From positions 1,757,327-1,821,326 of the forward strand of contig JAWQFM010000011.1 in the NCBI GenBank assembly GCA_033442325.1: a DNA stretch of 64,000 nucleotides, read 5' to 3'. A program made the position numbers and the translations under genes. Shown piece after piece: positions 31,661 to 64,000 of this stretch. Numbering within the stretch: the stretch's first letter is position 1; every line of letters starts with the position of its first letter. The notes beneath the pieces were generated by a model. That model was not told the DNA's origin. It saw nothing but the letters and a program-made list of their open reading frames with translations, and made no database searches. This DNA is from Salpingoeca rosetta (Eukaryota > Protista > Choanoflagellata).

Positions 31661-51079
<19,419 letters not shown>

Positions 51080-52079
51080 TTTGATGCGCTTTGCCTTTGC
51101 CTTGCTGATCGTGGCTGGCGCAGTGACATCCACCGCTTACCGCAGAACCGCAAGCAGTACAAGCGGCGACCCGTCGATCGATGTCTTCTGCTAAGTAGTT
51201 GTGCTCTCGGCCACCACGCTTGTGATGGTTTGTCTTGTGTGTTGTAGGCGTGTGCGTGTATGCGTGTGCGCTCGTGAGTGGCAGTCTTGATGTTTGTGGC
51301 AGCTGCCTGGCGTGGCGCTTGGGCTGGTGTTGATCGTTGAGTGTTGTGGGCTGGCTGGGAGAAAACGCGGGCTGGACGAACGCGTTGAGTGCTGAGTGAG
51401 CCACCAACAACACACGTGTTGTGGGTGTCTCACCCTCGCGGTTGGAAGGACACAAATCGCGTGAGCAACGCATGACTTGGGGTAAGATTGTCCAGGACTC
51501 GGACAAGAGCGCTTCCTGTTTGATGGATCGAACTGATTCGAAGGATTCGAAGGCACGATTCTCTTTGTTCTCCCATCCAAATCGTGAGCCTACCCAAACC
51601 TTCGGTCCTCAAACACAGCATTGCGATCATTTCGCTCTGGCTTGGATTTGCACCAAAACGCGCATTTGACGATTGTCGGTGTTGCCCATGACTTTCCGTG
51701 TCTGGAGGCGCGAACCACTCAAACACGTGCGGCGCGGTTGCAGATGATGCTGTGTGTGTGCGTGCATGTGTGTGCATGTGTGTGAGTGTGTGCGTGTGTG
51801 TGTGGATGTGTGCGTGCACGCGAGCATGGGTTTATGGTTGAGGCATGCGCAATTTTGTGAATGCTGGATGCGTCAAGCTGTCAAGGCTGCTGTCACTGCT
51901 GCGTCTGCGCTCCGTGGCTATCGTACGTTTCAGCTTGTTTGCACTCCACTGCGCCTTGCACACACTCTCTCATGCTTCTTGTTGTGTAACAATCCATCAA
52001 TTGCAAGCAGAAGAAGCTCGCTGGCGCACAGAGTCGTCACAGCAGGCAGCCGGCCACGTATGGGTAACACACGCCAAAG

Positions 52080-52719
52080 GCAGCCCTGGCAGCAGAACAT
52101 GCGCTCATGATGCGCAACAGCGCAGGCCTTCCTCAATACACATACGACTTGCACGGTTTGTGTGTGACAGCCGCTGTCAGAGAAGTGAGGGTGCTCATCG
52201 CTGAAGCCAACGGTGAGTCTCGTTTGTGTGTGTTTGGCGGGTGTGTGCGTGTGCGTGCGTGTGTACGTGCGTGCGTGTGTGTGCGTGTGTGTGTGTGTGT
52301 GCGTGTGCATGTGTGTGTGTGCGTGAGTATTTCGGACACTCGTACCAACGTTCCCTTGGTATTTACGCGTTCCACTCCGCTTGTCGCACACGCTCACCTC
52401 TGTTCCATGCTTCATGCATGCGTTCCAGCCCGACGGCGCACAGGCGTGAAAGCGCCCTGCTCCTACTGTTTTGTGACGGGATCGGGACAGTACGGCAACG
52501 ACGTAAGCGTGCGTGCTGCTGGAACATGGTGGTATCTGCATTCGTGCATTTAAACCATTGATGCGTCCTCACTTGCTGTGTGCTGTGTGCAACACGTGTG
52601 TTCGCTGTCTGTAGTCGAGGATCAAGGCCGTGCTCAAGAACTACTGTACGGGATCCGGCCTCCGATACGAGGACGTGGACGGCGCAACCATCAAGATCAT
52701 CGCACGCCCCTACCGCTGA
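52080..52719 (+). CDS. Small Smr-domain endonuclease-like protein (resembles the N4BP2/Cue2/NONU-1 C-terminal module). Exons 52080-52212, 52444-52502, 52615-52719; 5' end unresolved, possibly from ~51826
   Basis: Spliced translation AALAAEHALMMRNSAGLPQYTYDLHGLCVTAAVREVRVLIAEANG|VKAPCSYCFVTGSGQYGND|SRIKAVLKNYCTGSGLRYEDVDGATIKIIARPYR*. It has DLHG, TGxG and RIK motifs in Smr spacing. Both GT-AG introns are phase-compatible. Confidence 0.82.
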
Positions 52720-53105
52720 GATACATGCTTGATTGTTGGTGCGTGTGTGTGCGTGCGCGCGCGTGTGTGTATGTGTGCGTTCTTTGCTTGCTGCTGTGGA
52801 TGCTGTTCTGTGTTTGTGTTTGCAGTCCCTCGTCCTGAGTACGTTAATTGAAGTCATGCGAAGTTTTATGTGCTGTAATGATGTGATGTGACATGGCATC
52901 AAGTAAACGTTCACTTTGAACAAAACAACGCATGAAACGGAAGGCACAGAGTAACGTGACAGCAAGATTGGGATCATTGACAACAAACAGCCATGATAAC
53001 ACACACTCACAAAGCAACACACTCACAAAGCAACACACACACATGCAACACGCAAAGCAATACTGTTCTTCCACCCCCCTCCCACACACACACTCACACA
53101 CACTA

Positions 53106-54452
53106 TCAGTCTGACAAGCATTCTGGGACAAAAGTGATGAGGGTGAAGAGTGCTGGTGCGAGGGCCTCGGCAAGCAAAAGGAGGCGGTTCTGGGCCCAGG
53201 ATGTGTAGTGGACCCAAGGGCCGATGATGAAGCCGCCAACGAGCCAAACCCCAAACAGAATACCACCAATCACGACCAGGATGGCGCCCGCGATGTACAT
53301 GGCGAGGCGGACCAGGTTGATGACGCCGTCGACGCTTTCGATGTCGGTCTCGTCTTCGTCACAGGAGTTGGCCAGTTTCAACAGAAGACGCCCGCCAAGG
53401 AGCATGGGTAGGCCAATGGGGATACCGGAGAGGCTGTACTTGTGGTAGCAGACGAGGTCGCGAACAGAGATGCCTGGTGGTTTGCCCAGGTTGATGCAGT
53501 AGTCGTTGAAGTCGGCGTTGGTGAGCGGAAACAGGACCAGGGCCTGCTGGCTGGCGATGACGAGGAACACCACGCTGTACAGCAGCTTGACCATGAAGCC
53601 TTTCAACCAGTTGCACCAGCCCCCCTGCTCCTCCTCCTCAAAGTCCTCATCCCGGGAGTTGTTGAAGTCATCGACGGAAATGTCCCGTTTCAGCGCGGCC
53701 TTGAGCGAGGGCAACATCACCAAGGTTTTCAGCTTGAGGCGCTCCAGTTCCATCTCCAGCAGGAGCACAAACATCTCCAGCAGGACGAACCCCATCAGGC
53801 CGAGGACCAGGCTGATGGTGGCCACCGTGCCTGGCGACAGCTTTGCTCCGATCCGGATGCCCAAGCTGCACTCGCTGGGGCCGACCGGCTCCAGTGTGCT
53901 CGTCGTGCCATTGGTCAAGATAAAGTCGCTGCAGCCAACCTCGCGCAGGAAATCGGGGCTGAGGCTTGAGCTAAACGCCGGACCGGGGAACACCATTTCG
54001 CCCTCCGCCGTCCACGACGGCGTGTACTCGTTGTCGTTGGTGGTCCAGGCGTGAAGTCGAGCACAGAGAACCACAAACTCAAACAGGAAGAAGATGAGGA
54101 AATGCACAATGGGCGCAACGAAGCGCACGCGACGCGCCGAGCGCGGGCGATGCAAGCAGCACTTCAGGATGAACCATGCCATGAAGCTGAGCACGAGGTT
54201 AGCGCCGACGATGCCGTACAAGATGAGGGCAGGCAGGTCCAGCACGTCGCTGAAGTACCACGGGGTGTCCAGGCTGCCTGGAATCGGCGTTGGCGCCGGC
54301 GTCTGCGTGGTGAAGGGGCCCGTCGTCCATGTCGAGGTCGGGGAGGAGGTCAACATGCTGGTGCTCGTCATGTTTGTTGTTGCACTGGTGGTGACATTGG
54401 TCCCGTTGAAGGTCGGGAACATGGTCGTGTTGGCCATAACCGTGGTGTTCAT
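53106..54452 (-). CDS. Intronless orphan multi-pass membrane protein (448 aa, ~7 TM) with a Thr-rich N-glycosylated N-terminus
   Basis: Uninterrupted GC3-rich ORF from ATG 54452. N-terminal sequons NTT, NTT, NGT, NVT, NMT with no signal peptide. About seven hydrophobic segments, two loops each with a Cys pair, and two acidic loops. Confidence 0.8.
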   Translation of the reverse strand: MNTTVMANTTMFPTFNGTNVTTSATTNMTSTSMLTSSPTSTWTTGPFTTQTPAPTPIPGSLDTPWYFSDVLDLPALILYGIVGANLVLSFMAWFILKCCLHRPRSARRVRFVAPIVHFLIFFLFEFVVLCARLHAWTTNDNEYTPSWTAEGEMVFPGPAFSSSLSPDFLREVGCSDFILTNGTTSTLEPVGPSECSLGIRIGAKLSPGTVATISLVLGLMGFVLLEMFVLLLEMELERLKLKTLVMLPSLKAALKRDISVDDFNNSRDEDFEEEEQGGWCNWLKGFMVKLLYSVVFLVIASQQALVLFPLTNADFNDYCINLGKPPGISVRDLVCYHKYSLSGIPIGLPMLLGGRLLLKLANSCDEDETDIESVDGVINLVRLAMYIAGAILVVIGGILFGVWLVGGFIIGPWVHYTSWAQNRLLLLAEALAPALFTLITFVPECLSD

Positions 54453-55548
54453 GGTTGTGTGTGTGTGTGTGTCTGTGTGTGTGTGTTTGTTGTACTTGTG
54501 TTGTACTGGTTCTGCTCTGTGTGAGTCGCTCTGTGTGAGTCGCAGCTCTGTGCAGCGTGCAGGCTGATGGTGTTTTGAGGTCGTGTGCGACTGTGGGAAA
54601 ATGGTCTGGAAAGAAGAAGCAGAGGAGCGTGGAAAGATTTGGCTGCTTGACAAGGGGAGCTGCCTGGGCTGGGCTGCGTTGGGTCGGACGCTATGACGTC
54701 GATCGATACGCTGGCCTGCTTGTCGATGGCAAGGGTGCTCGAGAAGGAAACGAGGGGAGGACTGGTGAACGGAGAAGAGAATGAGAGAAAGAAAGCACAA
54801 ACGTCACACCCGAGCTGTGCCAGTGCGTGTGGTCTTTGGTTTTTCTCTTTGGGAATCACTGCGTCGGAGACGGAGGAGTGGTCTAGTGGTGTCGCTGTAG
54901 GACTGTGTAGACGTGTGCTTTCTCCTCTTGCACCTGGAGGACACAACACACAGAACACACGCCAACGTCCAGCATGTCCAAAGACTGAGGGAGAAGCCTT
55001 TCGTGCAAACTTCGAGGGGATGTCCTTCCTCCTCTTGGTTCCTGTGCCTGCCGCTAGCCTGCTTGTGGCGCTGAAGCTCCAACGCGCGAAAGGCGAGGCG
55101 AAAGTCGGTCGACCACGCACTTTCCCAGCCAGCGCGCCAAGAAGGACCCGTTCTGGAAGTGGCGCGTCTCAGTCGCCACCCAAAGGTTAGAAGGTTTGTT
55201 GTGTGTCTTTGTTTGCGGTGTCGAAGCGAAACGCTGAAAAGCGTCTGGGTGCGTTTTCTAGGCTTCTCGCTGCTGCGTTGACCAACTGACTTGGGCCCGT
55301 TCCATTGGGTTGCGGTGGAGTGCAATTGGGAGAAATTGGGGCGTGGCCTCACGAAAGACAGCAAGAAGAAGCAAAGCTGCGCAGCAGCGCAGGGTTCATT
55401 TCTCAGCTGTTGCGCTTGTTGTCAGTGTTCTCCTCTCCTCTCCTCCCAGCCCCCCCCCCCCCTCCAAAGCAGCGCCACCGCAAGCTTGTGCGTTTCTCCG
55501 CACATCAGCCTTCAACTTCAGTTCTTCTGTTACAACAACAGAGCCACG

Positions 55549-55936
55549 ATGGCCTCCGAGCACCGCCTGACGGACGGCGTGTCTGTGGAGGCGATCAAGG
55601 CCTTCTTCGCAGACCTGAAGCGCGAGTTCCCCGACACATACACTGAGATGACCACGGAGGATGCCTGCAAGCAACTGGTTGTGCCACGCACACGCCAGGA
55701 CAACTGCGCCTACGTCGAGCAGCTGCGCAAGCAGTCGCCAGAGCACGTGAACAAGGCCACCGTGTTTGTGTCACACGCATGGCGGTACAAGATTGCAGAC
55801 GTGCTCAACGTCTTGCTGGAGTTTGCGGATGAGCAAGCAAGGAAGGACGCCGCCCAGCCCGTGTTCTTCTGGTTTGACCTCTTCATGAACAACCAAAACG
55901 CCAACGTCACGGCCAACCTCCCACAAGAGTGGTGCG

Positions 55937-55986
<50 letters not shown>

Positions 55987-56044
55987 CTCTTGCGCTCTTC
56001 AACAACCACTGCCACACGCACACAGACACACGCACACTGTTCCC

Positions 56045-56088
<44 letters not shown>

Positions 56089-58187
56089 CTCTTGCGCTCT
56101 TCAACAACCACTGCCACACGCACACAGACACACGCACACTGTTCCCTCACAAGAACGACAACCCCTCCCCTAATCCTCCCCGTCTTCCTTTTTCCCCCAC
56201 CCTTTCCCCCTCCCCTTTTCCTTTCTCAACACCCAGGTGGAGTACCACGTTCAAGCAGTCGATTGCCAACATTGGCCATGTGCTGCTGGTGCTCATGCCG
56301 TGGCGGGACCCTGTTCCCTTGACACGCGCGTGGTGTTTGTGGGAGATCTTCTGTGGCATCAGTAACGAGGCCACAGAGGTCAGCATCCGCTTGCCCAAAA
56401 GCGAGGAGTTAGAACTGGTCCTAGCCATCGCGGATGACTATGAAGCCGTCACAGACACGCTGGTGCGCGTGCAGGCACAAAGAGCCGACGCCTTCAACCC
56501 ACACGACAAACACATGATCTTCACGGCGATCGAGTCGTGGGCGGGTGGCTTCAGCGCAGTCAACCAGGCCGTGAAGGACAAGCTGCGCGCGTGGTGCCTG
56601 CAAAAGGCGGTGGGTGCCGTCGAAGCCATGCGGGCACGAGGCGAGGACAGCACTGACGCCTTCGCGGGGCTGTGTGGCCAGGTTGGGACGGTGCTCAGCC
56701 AGTTTGGCGAGCACAACAAGGCCATTGCCTACTACGAGACAGCGCTGGCAATTCGGCTGCGCACTGAAGGGGAGAAAGGAAGAAACGCGGCAGCATTGTA
56801 CGGCAACCTCGGCAACGCCTACGGCGACAAGGGCGACTTCGACAAGGCGATTGAGCTGTGTAAGAAGGCCCTCGCCATCAAGGTGGAGACGCTGGGGGAG
56901 AAGCACTCGAGCACAGCTGTGACATACAACAACCTCGGCAACGCCTACAGGAACAAGGGCGAGTACGACAAGGCGATTGAGTTTTATGAGAAGGACCTCG
57001 CCATCACGGTGGAAGTGCTGGGTGAGAAGCACCCGAGCACAGCGAGCACGTACGGCAACCTCGGCGCCGCCTACCACAGCAAGGGCGACCACGACAGGGC
57101 CATCCACTACTACGAGAAGGCCCTCGCCATACAGGTGGAGACGTTGGGTGAGAAGCACCCGACCACAGCGAGCACCTACAACAACCTCGGCGCCGCCTAC
57201 AAGAACAAGGGCGACTACGACAGAGCGATTGAGTGTTATGAGAAGGCCCTCGCCATCAAGGTGGAGACGCTGGGCGAGAAGCACCCGAGCACAGCACAGA
57301 CGTACAACAACCTCGGCATCGCCTACAAGAACAAGGGCGAGTACGACAGAGCGATTGCGTTTTACGAGAAGGACCTCACCATCACAGTGGAGACGTTGGG
57401 CGAGAAGCACCCAGGGACGGCCACGTCGTACTTCAACATTGGCCTGCTGCACGCCAAGCGCGGGGACAAGGAGCAGGCCTGCGCCTACATCCAACATGCA
57501 CTCGACGTTTTTGCGACCACGCTCGGGCCACATCACCCAAACACCCGCAAGGCCAAGCAAAACCTGCAGCGCATTCGCGGTGGTGCTGTGACCAGGCAGC
57601 ACACATCCACGCAACACGTGTCAGAGTCTCAACTTCAGCAGCAAAACGTGCTTGCTCATCGCAACCTTCTTCTTCGGTTCATCTCGTCTGCTGTTGTGTA
57701 CCAGGCGTTTGCTCCACAACGCAACTTGCTCATGCGGTTTCTCGGTGCAGTTGCACAGGTTCACGCTGAGGCAAGACGCCCAGCAAACACGGGCAGTGAC
57801 GGTGAAGACAAGAAGACAGAGACTGGGCACGATTGTCCTCGTGGCTGCTCTGCACCAGCAAGAGCGTTGTACAAGGACGCTTGCAAGTGCCCTGGTGAGC
57901 CACTGATCGGCTGGTTGCGGAAGCGAGGGCGGCTAAGGGCCGCCTTTCGCACTCGCTGGTGCGCACTCATCGACGACCGCCTGACGTACAGCAAGGGTCC
58001 TTCCCTGGCAGAACGTGGGCGCATCCCCCTTTCCAGCGTGCTGTCAGCTGAGCTTGTCCATGGTGGCGAGGAGTTACACGTTGCTGTTTCTGGTCGCACC
58101 TTCGTCTTCCGCCTGCACGCGCGCTCTGACACCTCGCTGGCAGACTGGTGCACCGCCATCAACAGCCGGATCAACGCCACCACTTGA
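55549..58187 (+). CDS. HET/TIR-like domain + 42-aa TPR array + C-terminal PH domain. Exons 55549-55931, 56237-58187
   Basis: Motifs [19 protein letters not shown] and [10 protein letters not shown]. Kinesin-light-chain-type TPRs ([38 protein letters not shown]). PH domain GWLRKRG...FRTRWCAL...RGRIPL...RTFVF...WCTAI. One phase-2 GT-AG intron. Confidence 0.9.
55985..56147. repeat. Tandem duplication (~102-bp period) in the TPR-gene intron
   Basis: The 61-bp block AACTCTTGCGCTCTTC...CACTGTTCCCT occurs at 55985-56045 and 56087-56147, each copy preceded by (GT)n. Confidence 0.9.
56787..57416 (+). repeat. Coding tandem array of five 126-bp TPR units with high internal DNA identity
   Basis: Units start at 56787, 56913, 57039, 57165 and 57291, sharing CAACCTCGGC...GCCTAC...AAGGGCGA...GGTGGA...GAGAAGCAC. 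Divergent capping repeats lie on both sides. Confidence 0.95.
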
Positions 58188-59319
58188 CTGTGTGCTGTGT
58201 TTGTGTGTGTGTATGTGTGTGTGTGTGTGCTTGTGTTTGCTGGTTTGTCTCTTTGCTCCTTTGGTCCTGTCTTTCCTTCAAGTGCTTGCTTGCCACTTGC
58301 TTTGACTTGCTTGACGTTGCTTGTTTGTCGCTTTAGTAAACGCTTCACGCAATCCAACCGGCTGACAACGAGCAAACAACCTACCATACCATACGTCAAC
58401 CAAACACTGGCAACCAAACAGGTCCTCTTTCACCCTCGCGTCCAAGCACACAACGCCCGCCTTGCGCACCAGCAGCTCCAGGGTGCTGCCGGTGGAAAAG
58501 TAGTTCCGTCAGCACGTTGGACTGCAACAGTATCTGCAGGCAGCGGGTTCGGCCGCTCAACGTGCACGACGCCCAGCAGCCTCGTCAGAGGGCTGGGTCG
58601 CCAGACTGGACTCGTTGTCCGTCCCCGACCGTGCGGAACAGCACGTCGTCGCTGCACGCCCACGCCAATCGAGAACGCCGGCTTGAGCGCGTGGATGCGC
58701 CCAACTCTCGTCCTGCACCTCCGCTACCGTTAATTCCTCCTCGGGGTTCAGGTCGCCCGTCCCCAGCGACAGGTCCCACCATCCCAAGGGCTGCAGCGAC
58801 ATCAGGAACGTGAAGAGGTCTGCGTTCCAGCAGCGTGCTTCTGCAACCCTGTCTCCTCGTCAGTCTTTCTGCGCACTGTGCCCACGAACACGGCGGCAAT
58901 CCCTGACGGCAGCTGCAGCTTCGTCTCGAACGGCGCCTGCAGCGTCTTCTTGTTGACGACCGCGTGCGTGTCCTTGCCCACATCGCGCGCGCGCGTGTCC
59001 TCGGGCGAGACGTTAGAGCACGTCTCCTGAGTTTGGGGCGCACCCGTCCACCTGCTCAAACCACAATCGTGTTGATGGTGTTGACGGTGCTGTAACATGC
59101 GCTTGGGGGTCTCGGCGGCCAACACACGGGTACGTCGGGGTCGGTGAGCGACCTGAACCCAAACGGCCGTGGCGGCGGTGGTCGATGGTGAGCCCACCAT
59201 CCCCGTTGACGCATCCCAACAGACGTGTTTGCTCTTGATGGTTGTTGGTGCTGGGGAGCGAGAGAGGAAACGACGCCACGGTAGACGGGCAAATGACTCG
59301 GCGTGGATGTGGAGACGTG

Positions 59320-61195
<1,876 letters not shown>

Positions 61196-61362
61196 CGGGC
61201 TGTGGTGTGTGTGTGTGTGTGTGTGTGTGTGGCTGTGTGGGGTGGGAAGGGTGCAATTGACGTATCGAACGCATTTGTGTCGTGACCCCCCACACCATGC
61301 AAGGGAGGCATACCAAGGGTGGTACTTCAACAAAAGGGAACAATCCAAAAGTGTCGCCTCGC

Positions 61363-61462
61363 NNNNNNNNNNNNNNNNNNNNNNNNNNNNNNNNNNNNNN
61401 NNNNNNNNNNNNNNNNNNNNNNNNNNNNNNNNNNNNNNNNNNNNNNNNNNNNNNNNNNNNNN
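61363..61462. other. Assembly gap
   Basis: 100 N. Confidence 1.
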
Positions 61463-61848
61463 TCTGCTGTTCTTTCTACAACCAGCTTTGTTTGTGTAGT
61501 AGTTGCTGTGGTTGCTTTCCTCGTCCGCCACTGCCCATCATCATCCGCACCACTGCAGGCAGCAGCCAAAGAAACGCCAACAACACCACCACACAGGTTT
61601 GTTTGTTCTTCCACATGACATGTGTGTGTGTGTGTGTGCTTTGATGAGTTGTTTCGTCAACAGACATGTTTCCCTCACCATCACCATCACGTGTTCGTGT
61701 TGTCGCAGACGAGGCACAAGCGCATAGCAACGGCAATGTGGTGCCTCTCTCTCACTCACTCACTCACTCACACACACACACACACACACTCACTCACTCA
61801 CTCACTCACTCACTCACTCACTCACTCACTCACTCACTCACACACACA

Positions 61849-62271
61849 ACCTCGATCGACCAGGCCATGCACTGCGGCATGGTGAGATACAGACACCAGG
61901 GGCGTGCCACTTGAGAGCATCATAATCTTTCCCTGTTACACCAGCTGCCCTGAGGTGACTGCGTGCTTGTGCACGTGCGTGTGTGCTTGCGTGTACGCCT
62001 GTGCGTAACACCGTGTGTTTCCAGCGGAAATGGTGTATCATGTATGATGGTGCCATGGTGTATTGAAGATGCTGATGCACTGCGCATGCTGAACTTTTGA
62101 CCTCAGCTACACTTCCCTCCCTTGTCGCTCACTGCCATCACCATCACCTTTACCATGTACAAGGAAGGCGTTGTTGCGCAGGAGCTCGTCAAGATCAGCG
62201 GCCGCTGCAGGCCCAGCCACCAGATCTTCAACTTCCACGAAGGTGAAGGAGGATCGTGTGTGTGTGTGTTG

Positions 62272-62303
<32 letters not shown>

Positions 62304-62323
62304 TGTGTGCGTGTGCGCGTGTG

Positions 62324-62385
<62 letters not shown>

Positions 62386-63324
62386 CAACAAGTTGATTGA
62401 TGGGATTTCAACTCGACTGTATGCACACTCACCTACTATCTTGATCCATACACACGAACCCCCCCCCACAAACAACATCACACAACCTGTTGGCAGCAAG
62501 TGTGTGTGTTGTACAAGAAGCCACTGCTGGAGAGTGAGACCATGGGCACGGGCACCAACGTCGACGTCATTGTGCCGCACACCACCAACTCATTCAGCCG
62601 ACAGCGGCGACGCAGAAGCAGGTGTGGATGTTGTGTGCACGTGCGTGCATTTGTGTAGCTTACACGATCGTTTGCATCCTATCCAGCCCCATCTCCTCAT
62701 CACCACTCAACATCCCTTCTTTCATCTTCTTTTTCTGTTCTCAGGTGGCGGCATCCCCATGTGCACGCTGCGCAACTTCCCGCACCTCATTGACCACTGC
62801 ATCGAGTGGGCGCGGGCCAAGTTCACGGACCTGTTTGTGAGCCCGGCGTCGCAGCTGCAGCAGTTCTTGGAGGATCCTGAGGGATTCACCTCGGGGCTGG
62901 AGACGAAGTTTGAGCAGCACGAGCGGATTGGCGCCCTCGAACGCGGCGTGGACACGCTCAAGGCCATCAAGGACCTCGCCGCACAGGTGCTGGTGTTGTT
63001 GTTGTTGTTGAAGGTGGCAGCGTGTGGTAATTGTGTGATGGAGGTTGTGGAGGTGATGACACGCCCTTTCCTGGTGATGAGGGTTCACACCACCGTAACA
63101 CCGCCACCACTACAGCTGGCGCGTGTTATTCCTCAGCTGCAAGAGAAGCCGACGATGGAGACGTGTGTGTCGCTGGCGTGGCGTGACTTTCACGCGTTTG
63201 TCCGCCACGTCATTCTGGACCTCATCGCCACCTTCCCCGCAGGCGCAAAGACCAAGCGTGGAGAGCCCTTTTGGTCAGCTGAGGACTCGCGTGTGTGCGT
63301 GCGTGTGTGTGTGTGTGTGTGCGC

Positions 63325-63355
<31 letters not shown>

Positions 63356-63787
63356 TGTGCGTGTGTGTGTGCGTGTGCGTGTGCGTGTGTGTGTGTGTAT
63401 GGTTGGGTTCGCTCTGGCAGCACCATCCACACCGCAACTGACCGTTTTCTCGCCTCGCCCCTCGCCCCTCGCCCCTCGTGTGTGTGTGCTGCCCATAAAG
63501 CCTACAAGATCTTCCCCGAGGTGCTCGAGTTTGATCCGCAGAATCCGTTGCACAAGGAGTTTCTGATTGCCGCCGCCAACCTCTACGCATGCGTCTTCAA
63601 GGTGGGCTGGCTGTGGGGTGCCTTCTTTGCTTGGGGGTTAGATGGTGGTGGGGGGTTGCTTTGGGGTGAGGTGGTGGTGGCGGTTGCGTGCGGTCGTTTT
63701 CTGCTGACACCACTGCCTCATCTGCGATGATGTTCAGGTACACCCGACCAAGTACCCGAGCGAGGAGAACAAGCTCCACACCAAGCG
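61849..63787 (+). pseudogene. Disrupted ubiquitin-activating enzyme E1 (UBA1/UBA6 family) fragment; may continue beyond the window
   Basis: GVVAQELVKISG, KKPLLESETMGTGTNVDVIVPHTTNS, IPMCTLRNFPHLIDHCIEWARAKF (catalytic Cys at 62762-62764), GEPFWS, FDPQNPLHKEFLIAAANLYA. The adenylation core (GxGxxG...SNLNRQ) is missing between 62241 and ~62490, ESG is changed to ESE, and there are frameshifts at ~62505 and ~62595. Confidence 0.8.
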
Positions 63788-64000
63788 GTGAGCCGCGATG
63801 GCATGGGCTTTGCTTGGAGCTTTTTGCAGCATTGAATGGCTACGACGCTTGTGACTCGACACACACACACACACACACACATACACATGCACACACCCAC
63901 CCACATGCACATGCACACACACACACACACATGCGCACACACACACATACACACACAAATTCTCATGCCGTTCCTCATGCTTGCGCATGATGTGCCTTGT

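What the first reader, a model, noticed from the sequence alone, without database searches (positions are those of the whole stretch)
56787..57416. TPR array with homogenised scaffold and hypervariable positions: candidate diversifying recognition surface
Seen: five 126-bp units are near-identical even at synonymous sites, yet vary at fixed residues. Position 3 is A/V/S/S/Q, 6 is G/N/G/N/N, 10 is N/N/A/A/I, 13-14 is GD/RN/HS/KN/KN, and 23-24 is EL/EF/HY/EC/AF. Positions 28/32 covary (A-K, D-T, A-Q, A-K, D-T). The 3/6/10/13 spacing lies on one helix face. Known: fungal NLR repeat domains with high internal conservation diversify by repeat shuffling with positive selection on ligand-facing sites. 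Inference: a combinatorial receptor repertoire generated by unit exchange within and between paralogues.
Basis: partly seen in the sequence, partly recalled or inferred. Interest (0 to 1): 0.75.

Follow-up and report, generated by a model that had tools for sequence, protein, structure and literature searches.

The report
Hypervariable TPR sensor array, choanoflagellate family
This is the repeat domain of one of at least 44 related Salpingoeca rosetta genes. A rigid 42-residue TPR scaffold carries a few fast-changing groove residues, and the repeat units are duplicated and swapped between gene copies, which looks like a receptor repertoire but has not been shown to be one.

Summary
**Observation: partly confirmed.** The five 126-bp units sit exactly where stated and have the stated residues. 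They are not "near-identical at synonymous sites": nucleotide identity is 73-86% and dS between units is 0.40.

**What it is.** The units are the internal repeats of a kinesin-light-chain-type TPR array with seven helix pairs, counting two degenerate cap units. The gene has two exons and its public product is a 777-aa S. rosetta "TPR repeat protein". The domain order is an unannotated alpha/beta N-domain (possibly TIR/HET-like), the TPR array, then a PH domain.

**Family context.**
- I analysed 45 paralogous arrays of 5-14 units, all in exact 126-bp register.
- Positions 3/6/10/13/14 equal TPR 2/5/9/12/13, the classical concave ligand face.
- 273 internal units carry 256 different 8-residue signatures.
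- Among the 20 closest paralogues, units show no positional orthology. Synonymous distance is the same within a gene, between genes, and at the same or a different index.
- Flanking domains are mosaic (PHI test significant), and these genes cluster near contig ends.

**Selection.** Omega is about 0.1-0.25 on the scaffold. At the top groove sites it is 1.0-2.0 depending on method, so positive selection is not proven.

**Verdict.** This is a new variant of the fungal-NLR / Ectocarpus style of repeat-shuffling sensor. It has no NOD domain. The scan noted this gene before (s1-433377).

The parts
55549..55931 (+). Exon 1: first half of the N-terminal alpha/beta domain, with the motifs VFVSHAW and FFWFD. 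It ends in codon phase 2 (TG|G).
   Evidence: ORF and sequence. The public product P0001 reads ...PQEWWSTTF... across the junction. No Pfam family matches. It is 94.5% nt identical to paralogues on C29 and C36.
55932..56236 (+). Intron (GTGCGT...CAG, 305 nt). It contains an exact 102-bp x2 tandem duplication with (TG)n at 55944-56147.
   Evidence: An intron of 158-576 nt sits at the same codon in every paralogue examined.
56237..56660 (+). Exon 2, N-domain second half, with the family-invariant motif [10 protein letters not shown], followed by helical linker helices.
   Evidence: Invariant columns in the 45-46-protein alignments. The AF2 model of relative P0041 shows beta-alpha-beta-alpha order. 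It is 92-97% nt identical to paralogues, and the best match switches along the segment.
56661..56786 (+). Degenerate N-terminal cap TPR unit (unit 1 of 7).
   Evidence: HMM score 31 against 71-93 for internal units. Forms helices 2-14 and 18-36 in the model. Its helix-A groove positions are also hypervariable among paralogues: dN 0.93 against dS 0.55.
56787..57416 (+). The five internal 126-bp / 42-residue TPR units of the finding. Starts: 56787, 56913, 57039, 57165, 57291.
   Evidence: Pfam TPR_12 1.8e-103 and TPR_10 3.7e-76. AF2 pLDDT 95.3. Foldseek matches KLC1/KLC2/LGN TPR domains with TM 0.7-0.86.
57417..57542 (+). Degenerate C-terminal cap TPR unit (unit 7 of 7).
   Evidence: HMM score 45. 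The groove-equivalent positions are much less divergent than in internal units: dN 0.36 against 0.79.
57543..57908 (+). Linker between the TPR array and the PH domain.
   Evidence: The open frame is continuous. It is 94-97% nt identical to paralogues on C29, C2, C33 and C10. No Pfam family matches.
57909..58172 (+). PH domain. The stop codon TGA is at 58185-58187.
   Evidence: Pfam PF00169, E = 5.7e-7, 30.4 bits (cut-off 25.1), residues 558-645 of the exon-2 translation. Best paralogue match is C3:1834074 at 91.6% nt.

Best explanation
The region is the ligand-binding sensor array of one member of a Salpingoeca rosetta-specific gene family. Each member has an alpha/beta N-domain (possibly TIR/HET-like), a kinesin-light-chain-type TPR array and, in many members, a PH domain.

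**Shown**
- Each 42-residue unit is a helix pair. Its packing residues are under strong purifying selection.
- A few positions are free to change, chiefly 3, 10 and 13 (TPR 2, 9, 12), with 6 and 14. These lie on the helix-A face that lines the TPR groove.
- Arrays gain and lose whole units in exact 126-bp register.
- Among the 20 closest paralogues, most of which lie near contig ends, the internal units have lost positional orthology and form a common pool.
- The rest of the gene is a recombinational mosaic.
- Units coalesce within each family tier rather than before the family split.

**Inferred**
- Unequal crossing-over and ectopic gene conversion between paralogues reshuffle the units.
- Selection, diversifying or at least permissive, keeps groove residues different. 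Each paralogue therefore presents a different groove, giving a germline combinatorial repertoire of binding specificities.
- This sensor is coupled to an N-terminal effector and a membrane-targeting PH domain.

What the proteins bind, and whether the family is immune-related, is unknown.
For: **Identity and fold**
- Pfam TPR_12, TPR_10 and TPR_NPHP3 plus PH.
- AF2 pLDDT 95 with 14 helices.
- Foldseek hits to KLC1/2 and LGN TPR domains, and VIA hits to Podospora 'nearly identical TPR-like repeats' 4Y6W at Z 21.9.
- The species and the 777-aa product are confirmed.

**Family**
- 45 arrays of 5-14 units in exact phase, 44 of them with the same N-domain.
- Nearly all lie in open frames.

**Variable surface**
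- Entropy ranking.
- 256 signatures in 273 units.
- Positions map to TPR 2/5/9/12/13, which are the concave ligand-contact positions (PMC1261162).

**Selection contrast**
- Scaffold omega is 0.10-0.25.
- Groove sites have omega 1.0-2.0.
- The C-cap equivalents are less than half as divergent.

**Concerted evolution / turnover**
- TPR scaffold dS tracks N-domain dS between tiers: 0.77 vs 0.79 and 1.48 vs 1.40. Yet multi-unit arrays exist in all tiers.
- Position-specific codons are tier-specific.

**Exchange**
- dS is independent of gene and index.
- The nearest neighbours of the five units lie in five different genes.
- 14 of 16 well-supported unit clades span more than one gene, and in 7 the index differs from both ends.
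- Tandem duplicates occur in the C16, C26, C21, C20 and C3 arrays, and blocks are shared between arrays.
- PHI is p = 0.025, 0.021 and <0.001 for the three flanking segments, and the best-matching paralogue switches along the gene.

**Location**
- 16 of 21 close paralogues lie within 100 kb of a contig end (binomial p about 1e-6).
Against: - Positive selection is not demonstrated. ML per-site omega is 0.9-1.25 with none significant, and M2a is no better than M1a. Only counting methods exceed 1.
- The unit tree rests on 126 nt for 124 taxa and is poorly resolved. Tree error inflates inferred changes.
- A rapid burst of duplication from an array of then-identical units could mimic part of the 'pool' pattern.
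- Different unit indices can arise from unit insertion or deletion alone.
- No ligand, expression or strain polymorphism data are available.
- The helix-B variable sites (23, 24, 28, 32) covary with other helix-B sites. They may be packing variants rather than contact residues.
- The N-domain fold was not confirmed. Pfam finds nothing and the fold search was swamped by TPR matches.
- About 30 weaker loci could not be fetched.
- Contig ends are not shown to be telomeres.
Confidence: 0.6

Rival explanations
1. Ordinary TPR paralogue family with relaxed surface positions. The groove positions are simply unconstrained (omega about 1), as in TPR proteins generally. The family expanded in a fast burst of segmental duplication near chromosome ends. 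No selection for diversity and no repertoire function are involved.
For: - ML per-site omega is 0.9-1.25, not different from 1, and M2a is not favoured.
- The same positions are the most variable in TPRs at large (PMC1261162).
- Flanks are homologous, consistent with segmental duplication.
Against: - Groove sites use a restricted polar or small alphabet of about 9-12 effective residues with almost no Pro, Trp or Met. Some nonsynonymous changes are therefore removed, yet omega still reaches 1 or more.
- Counting methods give 1.4-2.0 at sites 3, 10 and 13.
- C-cap equivalents are conserved.
- Nearly all copies keep intact frames.
- A burst model predicts lower dS for same-index units than for different-index units, and that is not seen (0.437 vs 0.434 in the four 7-unit genes).
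Confidence: 0.25
2. Diversified endogenous adaptor family. Like kinesin light chain or LGN/Pins, each paralogue uses its groove to bind a different cellular peptide motif, for example in trafficking or colony development. The diversity reflects sub-functionalisation rather than non-self recognition.
For: - The closest solved structures are KLC1/KLC2 and LGN cargo-binding TPR domains.
- The PH domain suggests membrane recruitment.
- One paralogue is publicly named 'kinesin light chain isoform 1'.
Against: - There is no kinesin-heavy-chain-binding coiled coil. The N-terminus is an alpha/beta domain.
- Sub-functionalised adaptors should keep positional orthology and stable arrays, unlike the pooled, mosaic units seen here.
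- The family is restricted to one species with few distant relatives.
- The youngest copies cluster near contig ends.
Confidence: 0.1
3. Programmed (somatic or targeted) diversification. A dedicated mechanism rewrites the variable codons or reassembles units within a clonal culture, in the manner of lamprey VLR assembly or a retroelement-guided system.
For: Only the pattern itself: variation confined to fixed codons in a constant frame, and a pool of donor-like units. The Ectocarpus authors raised the same idea for 42-residue TPR exons (PMC3341825).
Against: - Every array examined is a complete, in-frame germline gene with its own N-domain and caps, not a cassette store.
- Synonymous sites also differ between units (dS about 0.45), as expected from ordinary divergence.
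- No associated machinery was looked for or seen.
- A single assembly cannot show somatic change.
Confidence: 0.03

Closest known systems
Highly internally conserved TPR repeats of fungal NLR-like (STAND) proteins, e.g. Podospora anserina Pa_2_10340 (Dyrka et al. 2014, PMC4986451; structures 4Y6C/4Y6W)
   Same: - Same 42-residue KLC-type TPR unit.
- Unit number is variable (2 to over 14 there, 5-14 here).
- Variation is concentrated at a few helix positions mapped to the concave face.
- Exchange of units within and between loci is proposed.
- Often linked to a HET/TIR-related N-terminal domain.
- 4Y6W is a top structural match (Z 21.9).
   Different: - There is no NACHT or NB-ARC domain between effector and repeats.
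- This gene's repeats are 55-81% identical, below the 85% criterion.
- Positive selection is not significant in my ML test.
- Repeat-number variation is shown only between paralogues, not between strains.
- The host is a choanoflagellate, and a C-terminal PH domain is present.
Ectocarpus NB-ARC-TPR candidate receptors with shuffled 42-residue TPR exons (Zambounis et al. 2012, PMC3341825)
   Same: - 42-residue TPR modules are reshuffled so that paralogy is obscured.
- Gene clustering and birth-and-death evolution.
- Only weak or near-neutral omega signals for the TPR units.
   Different: - There, each unit is a separate phase-0 exon and shuffling is exon-based. Here the whole array lies in one exon, so exchange must be by in-register recombination.
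- No NB-ARC domain here.
Kinesin light chain / LGN-Pins / nephrocystin-3 TPR domains (Pfam TPR_12, TPR_10, TPR_NPHP3)
   Same: - Sequence family and fold: Pfam scores far above the cut-offs.
- Foldseek TM 0.7-0.87 to KLC1 and 0.85 to LGN.
- Peptide ligands bind in the concave groove in those structures.
   Different: - Those are conserved single-copy adaptors with fixed repeat number.
- The other domains differ, and there is no KHC-binding coiled coil.
Designed consensus TPR (CTPR; 1NA0, 8BU0, 9QHB) and the TPR variability map of Magliery & Regan 2005 (PMC1261162)
   Same: - The scaffold residues of these units nearly spell the statistical TPR consensus (phmmer 5.8e-169 to a 16-repeat CTPR).
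- The variable positions 2, 5, 9, 12 and 13 are the same.
   Different: - The natural units carry the 8-residue KLC-type extension of helix B and its loop.
- TPR positions 33/34 are not variable here, whereas 22, 23 and 31 are.
Bacterial TIR-plus-TPR anti-phage proteins (e.g. BcTir/Tpr, bioRxiv 10.1101/2023.05.26.542521)
   Same: An NAD-glycosidase-type N-domain is joined directly to a C-terminal TPR domain without an NTPase (abstract). This would be the nearest architecture if the N-domain here is TIR-like.
   Different: - That the N-domain here is a TIR is not established.
- The bacterial system is a two-gene operon with no repeat-unit repertoire and no PH domain.

Membership tests
KLC-type 42-residue TPR (Pfam TPR_12 / TPR_10) | Significant match to the family profiles above the curated cut-off | tested here: met
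   TPR_12 339 bits (cut-off 30.1), TPR_10 250 bits (27.5), TPR_NPHP3 175 bits (100).
KLC-type 42-residue TPR (Pfam TPR_12 / TPR_10) | Tandem helix-turn-helix units with a 42-residue period forming a right-handed superhelix | tested here: met
   Exact 126-bp period. AF2 model with 14 helices and pLDDT 95.3. Foldseek TM 0.73-0.87 to KLC1 TPR.
Kinesin light chain proper | N-terminal heptad-repeat coiled coil that binds kinesin heavy chain, followed by six TPRs | tested here: not met
   The N-terminal 270 residues have no Pfam match. In relative P0041 they fold as alternating strands and helices.
NLR / STAND receptor | Central NACHT or NB-ARC NTPase domain between effector and repeats | tested here: not met
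   Pfam scan of the full public product P0001 at E <= 10. The best 25 of 49 families were shown: TPR-type repeat families plus PPR/PPR_2, PH, BTAD, ANAPC3, MIT and two DUFs, with no NACHT or NB-ARC among them. The TPR array begins directly after the roughly 270-residue N-domain.
Fungal-type 'highly internally conserved' repeats (PMC4986451) | Repeats of one protein over 85% identical across at least 100 residues | tested here: not met
   The five units are 55-81% identical in protein. A few paralogues have 95-100% identical unit pairs at nucleotide level.
Fungal-type 'highly internally conserved' repeats (PMC4986451) | Repeat-number polymorphism | tested here: inconclusive
   5-14 units among 45 paralogues, in exact register. 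Polymorphism between strains at one locus could not be tested.
Fungal-type 'highly internally conserved' repeats (PMC4986451) | Positive diversifying selection at concave-face positions | tested here: inconclusive
   ML per-site omega is 0.9-1.25, not significant. NG86 gives 1.31 with CI 1.03-1.64. Parsimony counting gives 1.7-2.0 at sites 3, 10 and 13.
Fungal-type 'highly internally conserved' repeats (PMC4986451) | Concerted evolution: exchange of repeats within and between loci | tested here: met
   Tier-specific coalescence of units and tier-specific codons. No positional orthology. Cross-gene unit clades. PHI tests significant.
TIR / HET effector domain (for the N-domain) | Flavodoxin-like beta-alpha fold with a conserved Glu in helix alphaC, and a profile or fold match to TIR | tested here: inconclusive
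   Strand-helix alternation, and an invariant Glu within the invariant W-C-L-W-E motif. No Pfam hit. The fold search list was filled by TPR matches. The resemblance to plant-TIR and HET motifs comes from memory and from PMC4986451 Fig. 6, which lists an S. rosetta sequence of unknown identity.
Programmed diversification systems (VLR-like cassettes, retroelement-guided) | Incomplete germline gene plus donor cassettes, or a reverse transcriptase with a template repeat | not tested
   All arrays seen are complete genes. No search for associated machinery was made.

The most novel reading that the evidence does not exclude
A germline combinatorial receptor repertoire in the closest living relatives of animals. 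Dozens of NOD-less effector-TPR-PH proteins would have their binding grooves diversified by exchange of 126-bp units among chromosome-end paralogues, serving recognition of microbes, viruses or non-self. This would be an origin of 'shuffled-repeat' immunity independent of fungi, brown algae and jawless vertebrates.
Probability: 0.3. Interest if true: 0.8.

Novelty: new variant of a known kind. Interest (0 to 1): 0.6.

Why it matters
Choanoflagellates are the reference outgroup for the origin of animal immunity, and S. rosetta can be manipulated genetically. A large lineage-specific family with a hypervariable TPR groove, a possibly TIR/HET-like effector and a membrane-binding domain would be a testable candidate for a pre-metazoan recognition system.

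It would also be a further independent case, after fungal NLRs and Ectocarpus NB-ARC-TPRs, of repertoire building by repeat-unit exchange. Here it would occur without the NTPase switch considered central to such receptors.

I found no paper in the held library that describes the family. Public records call its members generic TPR proteins or 'kinesin light chain'.

If the variable sites turn out to be merely unconstrained, the finding is still an unusually clean natural example of a near-consensus TPR scaffold evolving by unit turnover.

Tried and rejected
1. **Low-dS binning.** Binning unit pairs by low scaffold synonymous distance gave omega 4-7 at the variable sites. Selecting on one half of the scaffold and measuring on the other showed this was a selection artefact, and omega fell to 1.3.
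2. **IQ-TREE partition run.** The codon partition model did not report omega, so I wrote my own GY94-F3x4 likelihood code.
3. **M2a fits.** The first fit diverged numerically. The bounded refit stopped about 5 log-likelihood units below M1a with no site assigned to omega > 1. It was not better than M1a and was not fully optimised.
4. **Flank-anchored young pairs.** Unit pairs chosen by near-identical neighbours were too few and were themselves identical, so they carried no information.
5. **UFBoot tree.** The run timed out, so FastTree SH supports were used instead.
6. **Second genome fetch.** About 30 weaker loci are unanalysed.
7. **N-domain fold.** P0009 proved to be a truncated gene model. 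The VIA wide search with P0041 returned only TPR matches.
8. **Telomeres.** TTAGGG runs were listed near the ends of three contigs (C5, C23, C17) and at three internal sites. The listing showed only the first 100 of 255 matches. I therefore write 'near contig ends', not 'subtelomeric'.
9. **Exon handling.** Each was searched by reference. The spliced public product P0001 returned was used by its id.
11. **A retroelement-type mechanism** was considered only on the face of the pattern and was not searched for.
Full report
**Gene and organism**

The window is eukaryotic. It lies at G000:C11:1757327-1821326 in a 55.4-Mb, 68-contig genome.

The finding lies in a two-exon gene:
- Exon 1 is 55549-55931.
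- A GT..AG intron is 55932-56236. It holds an exact 102-bp x2 duplication with (TG)n.
- Exon 2 is 56237-58187.

Each was searched by reference. A word search with the exon-2 product returned a 777-aa public protein, P0001, named 'mbre TPR repeat protein [Salpingoeca rosetta]'. It is 100% identical over the 141-residue query region and reads ...PQEWWSTTF... across my splice junction. That confirms both the species and the gene model.

Pfam finds TPR_12 (1.8e-103), TPR_10, TPR_NPHP3 and a C-terminal PH domain (5.7e-7). It finds nothing in the first roughly 270 residues.

**The observation**

They are flanked by a degenerate N-cap unit (56661-56786) and a C-cap unit (57417-57542), making seven helix pairs. 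The AF2 model has pLDDT 95.3 and 14 helices, with helix A at unit positions -1..15 and helix B at 18-36.

'Near-identical even at synonymous sites' is overstated:
- DNA identity is 73-86% and protein identity 55-81%.
- 31% of synonymous sites differ (dS 0.40).

Alignment to consensus TPR proteins shows that unit position equals TPR position + 1. Magliery and Regan found these to be the most variable TPR positions, exposed on the concave ligand-binding face (PMC1261162).

**Family**

The genome holds 158 TPR matches at roughly 75 loci. They contain 45 arrays of 5-14 units, with 7 to 10 units commonest. All are in exact 126-bp phase, and each has degenerate caps.

Forty-four arrays follow the same two-exon N-domain, with an intron at the same codon. 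Almost all lie in open frames.

By N-domain identity to this gene the arrays fall into three tiers: 20 'young' (at least 86% aa), 16 'mid' and 8 'far'.

Sixteen of the 21 closest paralogues (20 young plus C16), including this gene, lie within 100 kb of a contig end. This gene is 38-92 kb from the end. Contig lengths are partly known and partly bounded by the size ordering. The binomial p is about 1e-6. TTAGGG runs were listed near only some contig ends, so 'subtelomeric' is an inference.

**Variable positions**

- Across 273 internal units the entropy ranking is 13, 3, 10, 32, 24, 14, 23, 6 (2.0-3.6 bits). Most scaffold positions are below 1 bit.
- There are 256 different 8-residue signatures among the 273 units.
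- D28 goes with T32 in 37 of 39 cases (Fisher p = 3e-24). This is the strongest covarying pair.
- The other top covarying pairs are also within helix B and its extension. The helix-B variable sites may therefore be packing variants rather than contact residues. I could not get model coordinates to settle this.

**Is the scaffold homogenised?**

In part, yes.
- In the young tier, synonymous codons are position-specific. Leu8 and Leu29 are CTC in 97% but Leu36 is CTG/TTG. Ile22 is ATT in 70% but Ile31 is ATC in 96%. Thr1 is ACA in 82% but Thr35 is ACG in 93%. The far tier uses other codons. Codon bias would not do this.
- Scaffold dS between any two units tracks the N-domain dS between their genes. 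Young-mid is 0.77 vs 0.79 and young-far is 1.48 vs 1.40. Yet multi-unit arrays exist in every tier.
- Units therefore coalesce per tier, not before the family split. That is the signature of concerted evolution or array turnover.

**Exchange of units**

| Comparison within the young tier | dS |
|---|---|
| Same index | 0.436 |
| Different index | 0.463 |
| Same gene | 0.448 |
| Adjacent units | 0.415 |
| Four 7-unit genes, same index | 0.437 |
| Four 7-unit genes, different index | 0.434 |

- Only 40 of 273 units have their nearest neighbour in their own gene.
- The five units of this gene have nearest neighbours in five different paralogues: C33 unit 4 of 9, C21/C1, C29 unit 4 of 12, C16/C4/C25, and C21 unit 6 of 10. 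Identity to these is 89-92%, against 75-88% for same-index units of the other 7-unit genes.
- Of 16 unit clades with SH support of at least 0.9, 14 span more than one gene. In 7 the index differs from both ends.
- Tandem unit duplicates, up to 100% identical, occur in the C16, C26, C21, C20 and C3 arrays. Blocks are shared between arrays: C3/C57 share five identical units and then diverge, and C33:29978/C4:53294 share units 2-3.
- The non-repeat parts are 92-97% identical to paralogues, but the best match switches along the gene. PHI tests are significant for three flanking segments (p = 0.025, 0.021, <0.001).

**Selection**

| Method | Helix-A groove sites | Helix-B sites (23, 24, 32) | Scaffold |
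|---|---|---|---|
| Pairs chosen for low scaffold dS (artefact) | 4-7 | 2.6-7.5 | 0.5-1.4 |
| Independent-halves design, gene-bootstrap CI | 1.31 (1.03-1.64) | 1.08 | 0.16 |
| All young-tier pairs, no selection | 1.7 | 1.66 | 0.22 |
| Fitch-parsimony counting | 1.68 (site 3), 1.85 (site 10), 1.97 (site 13) | 1.44 (site 32) | 0.25 |
| ML codon model, per site, 124 young units | 1.25 (3), 1.02 (10), 1.07 (13), 0.31 (14), 0.23 (6) | 1.21 (24), 0.93 (32), 0.43 (23) | about 0.09 (M1a purifying class, 83% of sites) |

- The first row is an artefact. Pairs were chosen for low scaffold dS, which biases dS downward.
- In the ML analysis no site is significantly above 1, and the bounded M2a fit was no better than M1a.
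- The methods agree that a handful of sites escape the strong constraint on the scaffold. They disagree on whether omega exceeds 1.
- Two side observations favour more than mere relaxation. The groove sites use a restricted alphabet. The equivalent positions of the C-cap are less than half as divergent, while those of the N-cap are as variable as in internal units.

**Comparison with known systems**

- The nearest analogue in mode of evolution is the highly conserved TPR, ANK and WD repeats of fungal NLR-like proteins. These show repeat-number polymorphism, concave-face variable sites and exchange within and between loci (PMC4986451). A Podospora example (4Y6W) is among the best structural matches.
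- The 42-residue TPR exons of Ectocarpus NB-ARC-TPR genes behave similarly, and there too omega was near 1 (PMC3341825).
- The differences here are the absence of a NACHT or NB-ARC domain, repeats below the 85% internal-identity criterion, an array encoded in one exon, a PH domain, and a choanoflagellate host.
- The N-domain has strand-helix alternation and an invariant W-C-L-W-E motif. I could not confirm a TIR fold.
- I found no paper in the held library describing this family.

**Verdict**

Positive selection and receptor function remain open.

Noticed in passing
window 55944-56147: An exact 102-bp tandem duplication, each copy starting with about 40 bp of (TG)n, lies inside the gene's only intron. 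Every paralogue examined keeps an intron at the same codon, 158-576 nt long.
   Followed up: partly
window 55549-56660; alignments A2/A3: The N-domain has family-invariant motifs: S-H-A-W, W-x-D and [10 protein letters not shown] with an invariant Glu. In the AF2 model of relative P0041 it shows strand-helix alternation. No Pfam family covers it, and the nearest ESM-Atlas clusters are unnamed (Haptophyta, Chlorophyta).
   Followed up: partly
L013 (G000:C57:744-) and L015 (G000:C3:1835056-): Two arrays share five consecutive 100%-identical units and then diverge in the last two internal units. This is either a haplotig or assembly copy, or a very recent duplication with a breakpoint inside the array.
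   Followed up: no
G000:C1:2745611, C7:1538283, C12:1380104: Runs of (TTAGGG)n lie far from contig ends, besides those listed near ends (C5:4192, C23:2040, C17:1385099). They could be interstitial telomere repeats or scaffold joins.
   Followed up: no
young-tier paralogues, N-domain versus N-cap unit: Synonymous divergence doubles from the N-domain (0.28) to the adjacent N-cap TPR unit (0.55), although both are positional orthologues. Either the flanks are homogenised by conversion or old array variants are retained.
   Followed up: partly
protein P0017 (public record): A family member is publicly named 'kinesin light chain isoform 1'. The family lacks a kinesin-binding coiled coil, so the name is probably a misnomer carried over from TPR similarity.
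   Followed up: no
window 50000-64000: The region is dense in (TG)n/(CA)n microsatellites, with more than 15 arrays in 14 kb. Several flank the gene (58189-58236) or lie in its intron.
   Followed up: no
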